Assembly: GCF_011386835.1 (NCBI RefSeq)
Contig: NC_088794.1
Coordinates: 65,596,001-65,660,000, forward strand
Length of the DNA stretch: 64,000 nucleotides
DNA from: Chrysemys picta bellii
Taxonomy: Eukaryota
Reading direction: 5' to 3'
Part shown: positions 7,107 through 64,000 of the stretch, piece after piece
Layout: each line of letters starts with the position of its first letter
Numbering within the stretch: position 1 is the stretch's first letter
Notes under the pieces: model-generated
Seen by the model: the letters and a program-made list of their open reading frames with translations, nothing else
Databases searched by the model: none
What the model was told of the DNA's origin: nothing
Translations under genes and position numbers: made by a program

Positions 7107-7597
7107 GGGTTGGTCTCACTGCAGTCACAGGATGCAGCATGTGTATACATACCTGAGTGAGTTTTAATATAGCTAGCTCAGGTACCAGAGCAGTGAAACC
7201 GCAGCAGCACACTTCAATGCAAGTATCAGGAGGTAGCCGTGTTAGTCTGTATCCACAAAAACAACAAGGAGTCCGGTGGCACCTTAAAGACTAACAGATT
7301 TATTTGGGCATAAGCTTTCGTGGGTAAAAAACCTCACTTTTTCAGATGCACCCACAAAAGCTTATGCCCAAATAAATCTTTTAGTCTTTAAGGTGCCACT
7401 GGACTCCTTGTTGTTTCAGTGCAAGCTGTACAAACTTGTCCGGAATCGTGGGTAATTACTCCTGCAGCTAGCCTGTGTGGAAGCCCATGCTGCCTTGGTT
7501 TCATTGCTCCAGTTTCTGACCTAGCTAGATTAAAGCTAGCACAGGTGTGTCAGTGCGAGCTGCAGTCATTCCCCGTAATTACAATGTAGACATTCCC
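7107..7597. mobile_element. PIF/Harbinger-type MITE (hosts a nested Penelope-like insertion)
   Basis: Ends GGGTTGGTCTCACT ... AATGTAGACATTCCC, with TAA on both sides. Confidence 0.75.
7224..7414. mobile_element. Penelope-like short insertion (direct part plus inverted part) containing a hammerhead-like motif
   Basis: GTAGCCGTGTTAGTCTGTATCC...GCATAAGCTTTCGTGGG...TTCAGATGCA followed by an inverted copy. TSD TTCA(A/G)TGCAAG at 7213-7223 and 7415-7425. Confidence 0.75.
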
Positions 7598-29419: not shown

Positions 29420-29543
29420 TTTCAGAGTAGCAGCCGTGTTAGTCTGTATCCGCAAAAAGAACAGGAGTACTTGTGGCACCTTAGAGACTAACACATTTAT
29501 TAGAGCATAAGCTTTCGTGGGCTAGAGCCCACTTCTTCGGATG
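29420..29543. mobile_element. Penelope-like short insertion (124 bp) with a complete minimal hammerhead-like motif on the minus strand
   Basis: TSD AAATACTCTG at 29410-29419 and 29544-29553. Minus strand 29543-29505 reads CAU CCGAAGA A GUGGGC UCUA GCCCAC GAA AGCUU AUGC. Confidence 0.8.
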
Positions 29544-36249: not shown

Positions 36250-36369
36250 GTTACAAAGTAGCAGCCGTGTTAGTCTGTATCCGCAAAAAGAACAGGAGTA
36301 CTTGTGGCACCTTAGAGACTGAAATAAATTTGTTAGTCTCTAAGATGCCACAAGTACTCCTGTTCTTTT
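36250..36369. mobile_element. Penelope-like insertion, fold-back form
   Basis: Direct plus inverted halves. 12-bp TSD TACTAAGGAAAA at 36238-36249 and 36370-36381. Confidence 0.8.
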
Positions 36370-37869
36370 TACTAAGGAAAAAACACCACAAATTGCATTT
36401 GTATCCCTTTTTGCTTCTTAAGAATGTATAAAGAAGCTGTGAAAGATCGCTTTCCCCTCAGATTTTTCTATTTCCTCATTTTAAAATGTTAAAAGTATCA
36501 AGAATATATTTTTCCCCCTCCTGATTCTGCTGGAGGTCTCATTGGCAGACTCTGAGAAATAGGTTGAAATCTTTCATAGTTCTTAATTGAAACTTTGACA
36601 AAGATAACTTTCCTTTCATTTGCTTACTAGGTATTTGAATTAAATAGGTATCAAAAACCCAGCTGGCCAGCCAAGAAAACAAAACAGAACACTAACCAAA
36701 AAACAAATACAACACAGATAGTTGTAATCAGACTGAATAAAAATCTCTTTCCTTCTCAAACAAGTTTCACTTCTTTGATAATTGTGATTTTATTACCAGT
36801 TCTTCAGTCATCCATAGAATAATTTAGGAAAAACAAGGTACTGAATATTTCTAATGTAATAAAGAAACATGGAAGAAAAAAATCTTTAAAAAATAAAATG
36901 ACCTTCAAGACTTTTAAATACATGCATCATTTATGTAGACTGTAAGCTCTTTGGGGCAGAACTTTTTTTTAACTGAAGGATTATACAACACCCAGCACTT
37001 CTGGGCTCTGATTGTGGCTTGTGGCCTCTGTGTGTTGTTGTAACACAAGCAATAATAATAAAGCAAAATAAAAAATGCCTCCTCTTCCACACCCTCACCC
37101 CACTTTTTCTAGGCCACCTTTAATCTTCTTTCCTCAGTTTTATTCACTAGGGGTGGTCTTTTTGATTAACAAATAATAATTGTCCAACTATATGAAAACT
37201 TTCACAGCAATACTCATTTTTTAAATTTTTCATTGAAATGAATCAAAAATGTTTCGATTTGAAACAAAAAAAATGTTATTTTAAGTGAACTGAAACTTTT
37301 TTAATTTTCTGGGTTCAGACCTCTCTCTCCTCTCCGCTTTTATTTTCATCTTGAAAAGAGAGTAAATGGATGTGAAATTGAAAAGGGGAGGGAAAAACCA
37401 AACTGAAAAATGTTCAATTAGTGCCTAATAAAAATGCATTTTTTTTGTTTAGTTTTGACAAAAAGATCACAAATTTCCAGGAAAACTTTTTTGGGGAAAA
37501 AAGGTCAATTCTTTTCTTTTATTTTTTTTCATGGAAAATACTTACCATTTTTTGACCAGCCCCATTATTTACTCCACAGTAGTGTTGAGAGGATTTGTTA
37601 ATTGAAGGTTCTACTACTGCAAATTAGTCCATGTAGACAGATCCTCATTTACTTTTTTGGGGCTCTACCCAGTTATAAAGGTCCACCCATGCAAAATAGC
37701 TTGCAGGAATGGGATCATTGTTTTTAAGGTGCTTTGAAGATGAATAGTGCTATATAAGCATTAAGGATTAGTATGTTAAATGTATGGTATGGTTTAAGGA
37801 CAGTTCACCACTTGGGAGTAAGGAAGGTGGCGATCTCAGTACAACAGCAATCGATGGAAACTTGCCTAA

Positions 37870-48952: not shown

Positions 48953-49118
48953 TGACAGGTTTCAGAGTGGTTGCTGTGTTAGTCTGTATCAGCAAAAAGA
49001 ACAAGGAGTACTTGTGGCACCTTAGAGACTAACAAATTTATTTGGGCATAAGCTTTCAAAAGCTTATGCCTTAATAAATTTGTTAGTCTCTAAGGTACCA
49101 CAAGTATTCCTGTTCTTT
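48953..49118. mobile_element. Penelope-like insertion, fold-back centred on the AAGCTT palindrome
   Basis: ...GGGCATAAGCTTTC|AAAAGCTTATGCC... with an imperfect 12-bp TSD AATATGCCATGG / AAGATGCTATGG. Confidence 0.78.
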
Positions 49119-58713: not shown

Positions 58714-59451
58714 TATACCAAATTTAACACTTTATTGACCATCTTTTAGAATCACAACCAGAACAATTTTGAGCCATTATCAACGAAGGGCAGTTAGTGG
58801 CCAAAATAGCACTTCAGAAGGCACGTGATGCATCTGAAAGAGTGGCCTTCCATCTTAAGAGCAGTCATGATGCGGCAAGAGTTGTGGTTGTATCTTTCAG
58901 GCTTCCCAAAGGAGGTGCAAGCAACTGTCAATGACCTCTCCTTCGAAGGCTCTTAAGTTGTTTGCTGAGAAGACAGATGCGTCACTCCACTCACTCAAGG
59001 ACTCCAGAGCCACACTTCGGTCACTATGCCCAGAAAAGAGAGAAAATGTAGTTCTCTGCCTTCTCACAGACCGCATAAACCGCAGTTTCCACCACAATGC
59101 TACTCTGAGCCACAGAGAAAGAAATTCAAATTCCAGAGGTTCAAACCATCAAGCCCATAATCTTTAAGATCGCAATCTGAGAGATCAAGGTCCTGAGGGA
59201 CCACTCCCTTAGACTTAGCTGCAATTCCCAATCCATTGCATCCCTTTGGATGCCAACTTTTTCCCCATTCTGCCACAATTGGGAACACATAACATCCGAC
59301 AGATGGGTTTTGGAGGTTATTACCAATGAGTATTTTATCCATTTCACTTCCCTTCCTCCCCACCCCGTTCTCCATCACTGTTCAAGGACCCTTGTCATGA
59401 GAGATTGTTGCGACAGGAGATAGATTACCTCTTCCATCCCTCTGCATCTCC

Positions 59452-60009
59452 GTGGCAAAGGTTTTTTATTCTCAATATTTCCTGATCCCCAAGAAAAAGA
59501 GAGGTTGGAGACCCATACTGGACCTCAGGGCACTGAACAAATATGTCAAGGCCCAAAAATTCATGATGGTCACACTAGCAGCTATTATTTCATCTCAGGA
59601 ACAGGGAGATTGGTTCTCGGCCCTCAACCTCCAAGATGCATATTTCCACACATCGATCCTACCGTCTCACAGACAAAGTCCCCATATTTCCTCTAGATCA
59701 GGACATTACAAGTACAGAGTATTCCCCTTTGGTCTCTTGTCGGCTCCCAGAGTATTCTCCAAGGTCCTTTCCATAGTAGTGGCTCACCTATGTACCCAGG
59801 GGATCATGATCTGCCCATACTTAGACAACTGTCTCCTGAAGGCCTGCTCCTTTGAAGAAGCCCTACCATTCACCCACAGAACTATGCATGTATTCATGAA
59901 CCTAGACCTGCACCTCAACATCCAAAAATTGAGTTTAAGTCCAGTACAATGTTTGGAGTTTATAGGAGCCAACCTTGACTCACTGCAAGCGAGGGTGCTC
60001 CTTCCATAA
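59452..60009 (+). pseudogene. DIRS reverse transcriptase remnant (YLDD changed to YLDN)
   Basis: FYSQYFLIPKKKRGWRPILDLRALNKYV...DWFSALNLQDAYFH...PFGLLSAPRVFSK...PYLDNCLLK. Confidence 0.88.
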
Positions 60010-61750
60010 CATAGATTTCACAGCCTATCCACACTTAGAGATAGTTCAAACCAGCCCTCAAACTTTGGCCAGACATTGCCATCACCTTCTGGGGCACATA
60101 ATGGCCGATATGTTCATCATATCTCATGCCAGGCTACCCATGAGGTGTTTGCAGATGTGGTTCATCTTGGTTTACAGGCTAAAGAAAGACAGGTTAGATG
60201 AACCTCTCTTGATGCCTTCCAGGGTCAGACACTCCCTGAATTGGTGGAAATACCCTGTAAAATGTGTGTAAGGGGGTCCCGTTCACTCAGCCTTCCCCCC
60301 CCCCCCAACTTTGCTTCTCAGAAAGGATGCATCCCTCTTGGATTGAGGTACACACCTCAATAATCTCATGACTCAGGGGAAATAGTCACGATATAGTACC
60401 TCCATCTGGAATTCACACACACTCCATGAGGTTGGTTTCCTCCTCTGTCACCTTCCTCAAAAATGTTACCATCTCGCAAATCTGTCAAGCAGCCACCTGG
60501 GCATCTATACATATCTTTGCAGAACACTATGTGATTACTGGGACTCTGCTTCCGACGCTAGCTTCAGCTCCGCAGTATTACCATCCATAACAGACTTGAC
60601 TCTGAAGCCCCAACCTCCCATTAGGGATACTGCTTGGGAGTCACCTACAGTGCAGCACCCATAGGGATACTACTTGAAGAAGAAGAGGAAATTACTCACC
60701 TTGTCCAGTAACGATGGTTCTTCAAGAAGTGTCTCTCCATGGGTGCTCCTCCCTCCTCCCTTCTACTTCTGAATTCTTGATATGGACTCTGAAGTAGAGA
60801 AGGAACTCAGGGTGGTTCGCCCACACAGCAATAAATAGCCTCGAAGCAGAGCACGAGAAGGGGAGAGTGCATGTGCAGGCCGAACAGACCCAGCTACCAA
60901 AGGTCTCGGATGAGAAGCACAGGGATGCACATATACCTACAGTGGTGTATCCATAGCTCTTGAAGATCCATCATTCTTCTGCACAAGTTGAGTAACCTCC
61001 TCTTCTTGAGGGGGCACAGCAATTGTCTTGTAGTTTTTTTGTCATAATCTATTTAAGTTCCATGGAAAGAGAGATGCATCTGATCGTATCTGATAACCTC
61101 TTTTTAACTGATAGTTTCCCCTGTTTTTGACATGATCTTTTAGAAATATGGAGATGTTTTTTAAAATGTGAGGAAAATCAAGTTTTAGGATTCTGCTCTG
61201 CATATCCAGAGGACATTAGAACACCCCTCAATTCCAGTCATTGAGCCATTATATTTTCTTGTACTTGGGATCTAATTCTATCCGAGGATGTGTTTCAGTG
61301 GTAATCATGTACATCTAAGACCAGGTATGAGCCTTAAGAGGGCTACTACAATAGACCTCTAAAAAGGTAAGGGGGGTAAGGACAGCATCAAAATTAGGCG
61401 TGTTAAAACTTAAAGGCCAAATTCTACAATTGCATTTATGTGGCCCTACTGAGGTCATTGTGGGGTGGCACAAACAAGAGCAGAATTCGTCTCTAACCTT
61501 TTCTTCCTACTTTAAAATATGTTATATGGAACAAATACACATTTTTACTGAAATTATGAGTCTGATTCTGATCTCACACCTGTCTAAATCTAGAATAACT
61601 GCATTGGCTATAGTGGAGTTATTCCAAATTTATGCTGGTGTAAATGGCATTAGAAACAGACCCAATATAATTAGTACTAGTGTGAATTAGCGTAAGTAAG
61701 TTAGGCCAGTTGTGTTACGATAGAGCATGTAAAAGTTTTTATGGTGTCAG

Positions 61751-62551
61751 CTACATTATGATCTGAGATTTTCAAGTAAAAAATGTTTCAGATCTGACCC
61801 TGGGCATCAGCAATCTCACTATCCTTCTGCCAAATAAAATACATTTAAAGTAATGAAGCACTTTTAAAAAAACTTGCATTTTCTAAAATTTTGCCACTCG
61901 GTTTCATATTTCACATATACTTCAGATACAGTCACATGGTTTCTGACCCACTCCTATGAGTAAACAAGAAGTTTTCTGCAGGGAGAGATGTTTAATATAC
62001 AGTTCTATGTAGAGCAGGGGTCGGCAACGTTCAGCACGCGGCTGGGCCAGTTTTATTTACCTGCTGACGCGGCAGGTTTGGCCGATCGCGGTCCCCACTG
62101 GCCGCGGTTCGCCATCCTGGGCCAATGGGGGCGGCGAGGGCGAGTGATGTGCTGGCCGCGGCTTCTCGCCGCCCCCATTGGCCCGGGACGGCGAACTGCG
62201 GCCAGTGGGGGCCGCGATCGGCCGAACCTGCCGCGTCAGCAGGTAAATAAAACTGGCTCGGCCGTGTGCTGAACGTTGCCGACCCCTGCTCTACATAGAA
62301 CTGTATATTAAACATCTCTCCCTGCAGAAAACTTCTTGTTTACTCATAGGAGTGGGTCAGAAACCATGTGACTGTATCTGAAGTATATGTGAAATATGAA
62401 ACCGAGTGGCAAAATTTTAGAAAATGCAAGTTTTTTTAAAAGTGCTTCATTACTTTAAATGTATTTATTTGGCAGAAGGATAGTGAGATTGCTGGTGCCC
62501 AGGGTCAGATCTGAAACATTTTTTACTTGAAAATCTCAGATCATAATGTAG
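61751..62551. repeat. 801-bp near-perfect inverted repeat (MITE plus inverted-duplicated 264/263-bp flanks)
   Basis: 61751-62014 is the reverse complement of 62289-62551, with one substitution and one homopolymer indel by my reading. Confidence 0.95.
62015..62288. mobile_element. Palindromic GC-rich hAT MITE
   Basis: CAGGGGTCGGCAAC ... GTTGCCGACCCCTG; almost fully self-complementary. Confidence 0.9.
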
Positions 62552-63004
62552 GTTAGGAGAAACCTTGTATCCCAGTCAAGATAGGTTTCCACTAGATGCT
62601 GCATCCCACACCAAATCTGACCAGGCAGATAAGTTGTGTTTTGAACATGTAGCTTCTTAATGCATTGTGTACTTGTTCTGAGTCACACAAATTGAATCTG
62701 TTGATAATGGACAGTTTAAGCCCGTTTAATTCCTTAAAATAATATCACATGCTGTATGAATAATAGGAAATTTTGTTCCCTCCCCCTTACCTGTCTGCTC
62801 ATGGGTCCTCCACTAGCATCAGTGGGAATTCTGCATGCACATTGATGGCAATATGTGGCCCTTAATACAAATGGAAATCACTGGGTTTGTCCAGGATAAT
62901 TCATCCTTGCTTTGAACAGGTTTTTGGCCCCAGCTCAATCCCCCATGGAAGTAGTCTCGGTCATAAAGCATATCAGCACACATTCACATAATTAGCAGTT
63001 ACTG

Positions 63005-63120
63005 GGTATGTCTACACTGCAAAAACAAACAGACAAACAAACCCATGTCAGCGAGTCTCAGAGCCCAGGACAACTGATTTGGGTTCGCACCAAAAGTCTA
63101 AAAATGGCAGGGTAGACGTT
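63005..63120. mobile_element. Harbinger-like MITE fragment
   Basis: GGGTATGTCTACACTGC ... GGCAGGGTAGACGTT. Confidence 0.5.
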
Positions 63121-63459
63121 CCTGCTGGAGCATTAACCACTCTGGGAGTACGTTCATCACTTTTATAACTCTCAGGCATTCAGCTGAAATAGTTGGAGCT
63201 ACACCAGGGATGAATTTGGCATCCTCCTTCTAAAGGGTTAAAAACATGGCTGTCTCAACTTTCAGTGCCCTTAAATGGGCATCTGAATGATCTGCAAAGA
63301 TGTGAATTTAGGATTCCAGGACATATGACCAAAATAGATTTAGGGAGGCAGTGTGCCTACTGGTTATAGCAGGGGTCTAAGGATTTGTCTAACCTAGAAA
63401 GGGTTAGACAAACCCTCCTAGTGGAGACATCATTTGTACCAGCAGATGTGCTTTTGCTG

Positions 63460-64000
63460 TGTCACGGGGGGGTTGGCCCTTGTGAAGGAAGTAGGTCCAG
63501 TGCCCCTGTGCCAGAACAGGTGTTCCTGTTTGGCCGATTAAGAGCGTGTGTCAGTACCCGGGGGCTATAAGGGACCAGGAAGAATCAGAGACAGGGAGAG
63601 GACCCAGTTAGTTGGAGGAGACCCAGTGAGTTGGGAGAGACCTCATGAATCAGAGCTGCCTGAGTGGGAGTTAGGGGCAGATGAAAGCTACCAAAGACTG
63701 TATATTTGGTACCTGGGAGAAAGCTGAAGGCAGGGGAACAGCAAGAAGGGTTTGCCGGCTGGCATCCCCAAACCAGAGAGCCAGGGCTGGAGAGAGCGGA
63801 AGTCAGGTGCGGCAGAGGGAGAGCTGAGGCCTAGGAAGGTCTGAAGGTAGGGGAGCAGCAGAGGAGCTTACTTGGAAAGATCTCCAGGACCAGAGAGCTG
63901 GAGCCAGAAGACTCATGAGAGGGCAAGGAAGAGTAAGGGATGCTCTCCTGGTAAAGATTATCTCCCAGTAGACAGGTTGTGGGGGTAGTTGCTGGGAAGA
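63460..64000. mobile_element. Probable LTR running off the window end
   Basis: Abrupt compositional change starting TGTCACGGGG, with purine-rich internal repeats (GGACCCAGT(T/G)AGTTGG twice). Confidence 0.5.

What the first reader, a model, noticed from the sequence alone, without database searches (positions are those of the whole stretch)
61751..62551. 801-bp palindrome: host DNA flanking a hAT MITE is inverted-duplicated
Seen: 264 bp of AT-rich unique-looking sequence left of the MITE (62015-62288) reappears as its reverse complement on the right. There are only two differences (GGCATCAG versus GGCACCAG, and AAAA versus AAA). The 8-bp direct TSD expected for hAT (ATGTAGAG) is replaced on the right by the inverted CTCTACAT. 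Inference: the self-complementary MITE seeded a fold-back or template-switch event (or aberrant transposition/repair) that overwrote the original right flank. If transcribed in the MPPED2 intron it would give about 400 bp of near-perfect dsRNA, a substrate for ADAR or endo-siRNA production, and a cruciform-prone fragile site. An assembly fold-back artefact is a real alternative.
Basis: partly seen in the sequence, partly recalled or inferred. Interest (0 to 1): 0.7.

Follow-up and report, generated by a model that had tools for sequence, protein, structure and literature searches.

The report
Transposon-centred 801-bp fold-back palindrome
A small hairpin-shaped transposon relic in a turtle genome is flanked by 264 bases of ordinary DNA and their mirror-image copy, most likely a large case of a known DNA-copying slip; no sequencing reads could be checked to rule out an assembly error.

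Summary
Window 61751-62551 is an 801-bp near-perfect palindrome. Its core is a 274-bp GC-rich, self-complementary element (62015-62288). On the left lie 264 bp of AT-rich DNA, and on the right lies their reverse complement. The two flanks differ by one transition and one 1-nt indel. Where a direct target-site copy (ATGTAGAG) is expected on the right, there is CTCTACAT. The 801-bp unit has no target-site duplication of its own, and nothing else in the 64-kb window resembles it.

Best reading (about 0.6): the element's own hairpin primed snap-back DNA synthesis, at a break or a stalled fork at its right end. This copied 264 nt of the left flank before rejoining the right side. That is a large version of fold-back priming / SD-MMEJ / template-switch mutation.

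Not excluded: an assembly artefact, a multi-copy long-inverted-repeat element, or insertion into an older palindrome.

I therefore checked no reads, orthologous loci or genome-wide copy numbers, and I sent no letters of 60900-63400 to outward search tools.

The scan has already noted the same kind of event elsewhere in this genome (s1-320879, s1-329955, s1-329969). This is a new member of a known kind, of modest interest.

The parts
61751..62014 (+). Left flank arm, 264 nt. AT-rich (GC 34%, one CpG) and unique within the window. It is the presumed template of the inverted copy, although the direction of copying cannot be polarised.
62007..62014 (+). ATGTAGAG, the 8-mer directly left of the core element and the putative hAT target-site copy. 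It fits the nTnnnnAn target preference, which I recall from memory.
62015..62288 (.). Self-complementary 274-bp core element, the putative hAT-type MITE. GC is 69%, with 33 CpG and CpG obs/exp 1.03. Its arms are 62015-62138 and 62165-62288. They differ at 8 transitions, 6 of them at CpG positions.
62139..62164 (.). Asymmetric 26-nt centre (the loop) of both the core element and the whole palindrome.
62289..62551 (-). Inverted copy of the left flank, 263 nt. It differs by 1 transition and a 1-nt indel. It begins with CTCTACAT where a direct ATGTAGAG is expected.
62546..62551 (+). ATGTAG at the outer right junction. It equals the first 6 nt of the 8-mer ATGTAGAG and is a candidate microhomology for the return or end-joining step. 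The next bases are GT, not AG.
61743..61750 (+). Left outer border, GGTGTCAG|CTACAT. Compared with the right border GTAG|GTTAGGAG (62552-62559), there is no direct repeat of any length around the 801-bp unit.

Best explanation
This is a real, fairly young inverted duplication made by snap-back (fold-back) DNA synthesis primed by a palindromic transposon relic.

Shown: a 274-bp self-complementary element sits exactly on the symmetry axis. The inverted copy of the left flank starts at the first base beyond the element's right end.

Inferred sequence of events:
1. A 3' end arose at or very near the element's right terminus. It could have come from a double-strand break, a one-ended transposase cut, or a nascent strand at a stalled fork.
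2. The right arm of the element annealed to the left arm on the same strand, forming a 124-nt stem.
3. A polymerase extended that 3' end along the left flank for 264 nt.
4. The new end was joined back to the right-hand DNA, possibly through the 6-nt match ATGTAG. This removed or displaced the right-hand target-site copy.

The product has no demonstrated function. It is a structural mutation that, if transcribed, would fold into roughly 390 bp of double-stranded RNA. In DNA it is a long quasi-palindrome with a 26-nt spacer.
For: - The symmetry axis of the flanks coincides with the element's own axis, and the palindrome runs seamlessly through both element ends.
- There is no direct 8-bp repeat at the element. 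The right side carries the reverse complement of the left 8-mer.
- No direct repeat of any length flanks the 801-bp unit, and its outer ends show no terminal motif.
- The flank is AT-rich and unique in the 64-kb window, with a sharp GC step (34% to 69%) exactly at the CAG.../...CTG termini.
- The duplication is bounded on both sides. It returns to unrelated right-hand sequence after 263 nt, and the outer junction ends in ATGTAG, the first 6 nt of the expected right-hand target copy. This is what synthesis-dependent microhomology joining predicts (PMC5728401, PMC2943611).
- The mechanism is documented. Fold-back priming at breaks near inverted repeats is described in PMC10622511 and PMC7999016. 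Local fold-back templated inversions of 5-34 bp are described in PMC11724301. Short-range template switching that yields single inverted repeats is described in PMC7954356.
- Follow-up agents of this scan judged two similar palindromes in the same genome to be real (s1-320879, s1-329955). These notes were not checked here.
Against: - No independent data were examined.
- The single T/C difference in 263 nt (0.38%) is about the painted turtle's heterozygosity of 3e-3 (PMC4054807). An artefact built from the other haplotype would therefore look the same.
- The microhomology reading is imperfect. After ATGTAG the sequence continues GT, not the AG expected from ATGTAGAG.
- The higher divergence of the element's arms (8/124 vs 1/263, p = 6e-4) would favour priming by a pre-existing, already diverged hairpin. 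But 6 of the 8 differences are at CpG positions, and the non-CpG contrast is not significant (2/88 vs 1/261, p = 0.16).
- A 264-nt copy is about ten times longer than the experimentally described snap-back insertions.
- The core's identity as a mobile element is not demonstrated in this window.
Confidence: 0.6

Rival explanations
1. Assembly artefact. The right arm does not exist in the animal. A chimeric fold-back molecule or a mis-assembly at a hard-to-sequence GC-rich palindrome wrote the reverse complement of the left flank into the consensus.
For: Strong palindromes are known trouble spots for assembly. The two arm differences are a T/C site and a homopolymer length. A heterozygous site (heterozygosity about 3e-3, PMC4054807) plus a polishing error would give exactly that. 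No reads could be examined.
Against: A fold-back chimera continues in the inverted direction to the end of the molecule. Here the sequence returns to unrelated DNA after exactly 263 nt, with no N and no overlap an assembler could use. That would need two switches in the same place in the consensus. The fold axis coincides with a natural hairpin, and the junction carries a 6-nt microhomology that is far too short for an assembler. Follow-up agents reported similar palindromes in this genome as real (unchecked).
Confidence: 0.15
2. The whole 801 bp is one copy of a multi-copy element with about 388-bp terminal inverted repeats (a foldback-type or long-TIR non-autonomous transposon). The GC-rich core would then be its internal part.
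For: Its shape alone fits, since foldback-type elements are long near-perfect palindromes. Copy number in the genome could not be measured.
Against: No target-site duplication of 2-10 bp flanks the unit, although its arms are 99.6% alike and therefore young. The outer ends show no recognisable terminal motif, while canonical CAG.../...CTG ends sit inside, at a sharp composition step. No second copy or fragment occurs in 64 kb.
Confidence: 0.12
3. A TA-duplicating (Tc1/mariner-type) MITE with ends GAGCAGGGG.../...CCCCTGCTC inserted into the central TA of an older 525-bp spacer-less perfect palindrome. Because TA is itself palindromic, symmetry would be kept.
For: With the borders shifted 3 nt outward, the element is flanked by TA on both sides, and the reconstructed empty site TTCTATGTACATAGAA is a perfect palindrome (reading).
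Against: This needs an unexplained, very unstable spacer-less 525-bp palindrome and an insertion at its exact centre, about 1 position in 525. The CAG start and an 8-mer fitting the hAT target pattern point to hAT. The model only moves the question of how the flank palindrome arose.
Confidence: 0.05

Closest known systems
Fold-back priming at a double-strand break next to an inverted repeat (yeast mre11/sae2 inverted duplications, CHO I-SceI experiments; PMC10622511, PMC7999016)
   Same: A pre-existing inverted repeat at the centre. Intrastrand annealing of a resected 3' end. Fill-in synthesis that copies the adjacent flank in reverse orientation. The junction lies exactly at the repeat.
   Different: Those events end as hairpin-capped chromosomes and dicentrics with kilobase-to-megabase duplications. 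Here synthesis stopped after 264 nt and the second end was recaptured, leaving a small interstitial palindrome. The priming repeat has 124-nt arms, against 3-15 bp at natural yeast sites.
SD-MMEJ snap-back synthesis and local fold-back templated insertions at breaks (PMC5728401, PMC2943611, PMC11724301)
   Same: A hairpin near the break primes limited synthesis. The nascent end then pairs with microhomology on the other end. The product is an inverted templated insertion between intact flanks. This is the same topology as here, including a candidate 6-nt microhomology.
   Different: Described insertions are mostly 5-34 bp, while this one is 263-264 nt. The enzymes involved (Pol theta or Pol delta) cannot be inferred from sequence.
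Short-range template-switch mutations, four-point model (PMC7954356; de novo hairpins, PMC10710096)
   Same: It fits the 3-2-1-4 pattern: the strand leaves at the element's end, copies backwards along the complementary or nascent strand, then returns downstream, producing one perfect inverted repeat.
   Different: Typical events span tens of bases and often only perfect an existing quasi-palindrome. Here a whole 264-nt host flank was added to a transposon hairpin.
Ac/Ds (hAT) alternative transposition giving inverted duplications that make dsRNA and siRNA (bioRxiv 10.1101/2020.01.07.897926)
   Same: An inverted duplication associated with a hAT-type element, with the potential to yield hairpin RNA when read through.
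   Different: Alternative transposition uses the termini of two elements or sister chromatids and inserts at a new target with an 8-bp duplication. By my own derivation, such products are not symmetric about a single retained element and do not start the inverted copy at the element's border.
Human PATRRs (palindromic AT-rich repeats, 200-600 bp; PMC7999016)
   Same: A several-hundred-bp near-perfect palindrome in non-coding DNA, comparable in size.
   Different: PATRRs are over 90% AT, with little or no spacer. This palindrome has arms of 34% GC, a 69% GC core and a 26-nt asymmetric centre, which should reduce cruciform extrusion. No breakage data exist for it.

Membership tests
hAT-superfamily MITE (the core element 62015-62288) | Terminal inverted repeats | tested here: met
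   The whole element is self-complementary, with 124-nt arms that match at 116 of 124 positions. The 23-nt terminus is found once on each strand.
hAT-superfamily MITE (the core element 62015-62288) | 8-bp direct target-site duplication | tested here: not met
   The left side reads ATGTAGAG and the right side CTCTACAT, its reverse complement. Under the fold-back model the direct copy was lost, so this copy cannot show the feature.
hAT-superfamily MITE (the core element 62015-62288) | Many dispersed copies with different flanks | not testable with these tools
   There is only one copy in the 64-kb window. No turtle genome is held in the collections, and letters of this stretch were not sent outward.
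hAT-superfamily MITE (the core element 62015-62288) | hAT-like terminal motif (CAG...) and target preference nTnnnnAn | tested here: inconclusive
   The ends read CAGGGG.../...CCCCTG, and ATGTAGAG has T at position 2 and A at position 7. The reference patterns are recalled from memory, not tested against a library.
Fold-back / snap-back inverted duplication (template-switch mutation) | The inverted copy starts at the border of a pre-existing inverted repeat and copies the sequence immediately on its other side | tested here: met
   The complementarity runs unbroken from 62014|62015 through 62288|62289.
Fold-back / snap-back inverted duplication (template-switch mutation) | Microhomology at the return junction | tested here: inconclusive
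   ATGTAG at 62546-62551 equals the first 6 nt of the expected right-hand target copy, but the next 2 nt do not fit.
Fold-back / snap-back inverted duplication (template-switch mutation) | An ancestral state without the inverted copy, in an outgroup or as a polymorphism | not testable with these tools
Exact look-ups of neighbouring ORFs found no other assembly.
Long-TIR / foldback transposon (the whole 801 bp) | Target-site duplication around the unit | tested here: not met
   The borders read ...GGTGTCAG|CTACAT...ATGTAG|GTTAGGAG..., with no direct repeat of 2-10 bp.
Long-TIR / foldback transposon (the whole 801 bp) | Multiple copies | not testable with these tools
   There is no further copy in the window.
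PATRR-type fragile palindrome | Over 90% AT, with a near-perfect symmetric centre | tested here: not met
   The arms are 34% GC, the core is 69% GC and the centre has 26 unpaired nt.

The most novel reading that the evidence does not exclude
Palindromic hAT-type MITEs in the painted turtle may act as recurrent seeds of palindrome growth. A one-ended transposase cut, or a break at the MITE terminus, would let the element's own hairpin prime copying of host flanks. That would repeatedly build several-hundred-bp host-DNA palindromes, and long dsRNA-forming loci, in the germ line. The one-sided G.U pattern (8 of 9 arm differences are wobbles in a + strand transcript) would then hint at strand-specific exposure of, or selection on, the hairpin.
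Probability: 0.15. Interest if true: 0.55.

Novelty: new member of a known kind. Interest (0 to 1): 0.3.

Why it matters
If real, this is a clean natural germ-line example of a long (264-nt) snap-back duplication in which the priming hairpin is a transposon relic. It links mobile-element structure to the birth of long palindromes, which are otherwise known mainly from yeast mutants, cancer genomes and the unexplained human PATRRs. It also marks a locus that could yield about 390 bp of intramolecular dsRNA. It does not reveal a new mechanism, and no function is indicated.

Tried and rejected
That excluded collection scans, Rfam, and paper or findings searches by sequence. As a result there was no MITE-family consensus, no copy-number test and no orthologous locus.

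2. Working beside the stretch. Exact look-up of six ATG-started ORFs at 58931-60587 and 63681-63916 found none in the protein collection, so no independent contigs could be fetched. I ran no further search on this.

3. Hairpin age from arm divergence. I tried to use divergence to tell whether the hairpin predates the duplication. Overall, the element's arms are more diverged than the flanks (p = 6e-4). The signal is mostly CpG decay, and the non-CpG contrast is not significant (p = 0.16).

4. Sister-chromatid or alternative hAT transposition. I derived the expected products by hand. None gives flank - element - inverted flank with the copy starting at the element's border, so I rejected this as the mechanism.

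5. hAT flank-hairpin replication. This would centre the palindrome on the flank/element border and lose the element. Rejected.

6. Gene context. Pfam on the ten longest ORFs of the window found only a reverse-transcriptase fragment. The MPPED2-intron claim was left untested.

7. A 6-nt templated filler (GTTAGG, also at 61700) at the right junction. It is within chance, so I dropped it.

Full report
**What is there**

The sequence at 61751-62551 is a single near-perfect palindrome. The repeat finder reports it as two inverted pairs: 61837-62138 / 62165-62466 (302 nt, 97%) and 61751-61838 / 62464-62551 (88 nt, 99%). Only a 1-nt indel splits them, and 26 nt remain unpaired at the centre.

A global alignment of the two halves shows three zones:
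- Outer flanks, 61751-62014 and 62289-62551. They differ at one transition (61807 T / 62495 C) and one extra A (61836).
- Arms of the core element, 62015-62138 and 62165-62288. They differ at eight transitions.
- The asymmetric centre, 62139-62164.

The core starts CAGGGGTCGGCAAC and ends with the reverse complement. Its 23-nt terminus occurs once on each strand, and none is expected by chance. ATGTAGAG lies to its left and CTCTACAT to its right. As single-stranded DNA, 61701-62601 folds at -503.6 kcal/mol against -110 for shuffles, z = -85.

**Surroundings**

- The flanks have 34% GC and a single CpG. The core has 69% GC, 33 CpG and a CpG observed/expected ratio of 1.03, in a window whose ratio is 0.25. 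The composition step lies exactly at the CAG.../...CTG ends.
- Neither the core nor the flank has another copy in the 64-kb window at blastn word size 9.
- The borders of the 801-bp unit read GGTGTCAG|CTACAT...ATGTAG|GTTAGGAG, with no direct repeat of any length.
- Upstream, 59452-60006 encodes a reverse-transcriptase fragment (RVT_1, E = 9e-13).
- The other palindromes in the window (7254-7421, 49004-49111, 36285-36370) belong to an unrelated repeat family.

**What could not be done**

Working beside the stretch, I looked up six ATG-started ORFs from 58931-60587 and 63681-63916 by exact sequence. None is in the collection.

Four tests are therefore missing:
- spanning reads;
- orthologous loci;
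- genome-wide copy number of the flank;
- a consensus of the element family.

The claim that the locus is an MPPED2 intron was also not tested.

**Mechanism**

The decisive anatomical fact is that the inverted copy begins at the first base beyond the element's right end, and that it copies the sequence immediately left of the element. This is the signature of a 3' end at the element's right terminus that folded back on the element's own 124-nt complementary arm and was extended along the left flank.

The literature describes exactly this sequence of events:
- intrastrand annealing of inverted repeats exposed at a resected break, followed by fill-in synthesis (PMC10622511; review PMC7999016);
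- at small scale, snap-back synthesis followed by pairing of the nascent end with microhomology on the other end (SD-MMEJ: PMC5728401, PMC2943611);
- local fold-back inversions of 5-34 bp (PMC11724301);
- a replicative version, the short-range template switch of the four-point model, whose 3-2-1-4 pattern gives a single inverted repeat (PMC7954356).

The present case has the SD-MMEJ / template-switch topology, an interstitial inverted insertion between intact flanks. It is about ten times longer, with a transposon relic as the priming hairpin.

The geometry and the loss of the direct right-hand 8-mer are shown. The origin of the 3' end (a break, a one-ended transposase cut or a stalled fork) and the polymerase involved are inferred.

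**Junction**

The right arm ends in ATGTAG (62546-62551). This is the reverse complement of 61751-61756 and equals the first six bases of ATGTAGAG, the 8-mer expected directly right of the element before the event. A nascent end ...ATGTAG could pair with that target-site copy on the other side of the break, which would explain why copying ended at 61751.

The fit is imperfect, because the next two bases are GT and not AG. The match becomes exact only if the element's true ends lie 2 nt further out, or if the two target copies differed. An orthologous locus or the family consensus is needed to decide. I treat this as suggestive and unexplained.

**Did the hairpin predate the duplication?**

The element's arms are more diverged than the flanks (8/124 vs 1/263, Fisher p = 6e-4). 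That would be expected if an already diverged hairpin primed a fresh copy of the flank. However, six of the eight differences lie at CpG positions, which the flanks lack. For non-CpG positions the contrast is 2/88 vs 1/261 (p = 0.16). Post-event CpG decay of arms that were once identical is therefore equally possible.

**Age**

One substitution in 263 nt gives K of about 0.004. Turtles evolve at roughly one third of the human rate (PMC4054807). The event is therefore of the order of a few million years old, with a Poisson range from under 0.1 to over 20 million years. Arm-to-arm gene conversion would make it look younger than it is.

**Rivals**

*Assembly artefact (0.15).*
- For: palindromes are hard to assemble. 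The one T/C site (0.38%) is about the species' heterozygosity of 3e-3 (PMC4054807), and the other difference is a homopolymer length. The two differences therefore do not prove two real copies.
- Against: a fold-back chimera does not return to unrelated sequence after 263 nt, no assembler joins on 6 nt, and there is no gap.

*Multi-copy long-TIR element (0.12).*
- Against: the unit has no target-site duplication despite arms that are 99.6% alike. Canonical transposon ends lie inside it rather than at its tips, and there is a sharp composition step at those ends.

*TA-duplicating MITE inserted at the centre of an older spacer-less palindrome (0.05).*
- For: it is formally compatible, because TA is itself palindromic and the reconstructed empty site would be a perfect palindrome.
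- Against: it requires an unexplained, unstable precursor and an insertion at its exact centre.

*Rejected outright.* Alternative (sister-chromatid) hAT transposition and replication of a transposase-made flank hairpin were worked through by hand. Their products are not symmetric about a retained element.

**Consequences**

As RNA, the + strand folds into 392 pairs (9 of them G.U; longest unbroken helix 274 pairs; -765 kcal/mol). The - strand folds into 384 pairs. So about 390 bp of dsRNA would form if the locus is transcribed. Editing, small RNAs and fragility remain untested inferences. The 26-nt asymmetric centre and the mismatches beside it should lower cruciform extrusion relative to spacer-less palindromes (principle from PMC7999016).

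**Relation to earlier notes of the scan**

The same kind of event has already been noted on other DNA of this genome, which follow-up agents call the painted turtle:
- s1-320879: a 165-bp fold-back inside an old MITE, judged real, species-specific and ordinary.
- s1-329955: a 509-bp palindrome in a GART intron, judged real and attributed to a copying slip.
- s1-329969: a hAT MITE with an inverted flank capture, not followed up.

I did not check them. They raise the prior that such palindromes are real in this assembly and lower the novelty of this one.

**Verdict**

- Observation: confirmed.
- Interpretation: partly supported.
- Most likely reading: a real, unusually long snap-back inverted duplication seeded by a palindromic transposon relic. 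This is a new member of a known kind, with no function shown and without confirmation from reads.
- Interest: 0.3.

Noticed in passing
window 62015-62288: The core element looks like a CpG island: GC 69% and CpG obs/exp 1.03, in a window at 0.25. It carries a CCAAT box (62122) next to a GGGGCGG box (62128), with their mirror images at 62177 and 62169. This layout resembles a bidirectional promoter. The element is either very young or protected from germ-line methylation.
   Followed up: partly
window 61751-62551: Eight of the nine transition differences between the arms would be G.U wobbles in a + strand transcript and A.C mismatches in a - strand one. Five of six CpG decays are C>T on the + strand. 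The two-sided binomial p is about 0.04. This could reflect strand-asymmetric deamination or selection on a + strand hairpin.
   Followed up: partly
window 59452-60006 (+): A 185-aa ORF matches reverse transcriptase (RVT_1, E = 9e-13). It reads YLDN where the catalytic YxDD motif is expected. It is a retroelement relic about 1.7 kb upstream of the palindrome.
   Followed up: partly
window 7254-7421, 36285-36370, 49004-49111: Three short palindromic copies of one repeat family share the motif GGCACCTTAGAGACTAACA...TTTGGGCATAAGCTTT. They are probably the Penelope-like fold-back insertions that the scan noted at 29420-29543 (s1-320908). They are unrelated to the element studied here.
   Followed up: no
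window 63400-64000: A purine-rich stretch with GC 54-57% and strong positive GC and AT skew runs off the window end. It was not identified.
   Followed up: no
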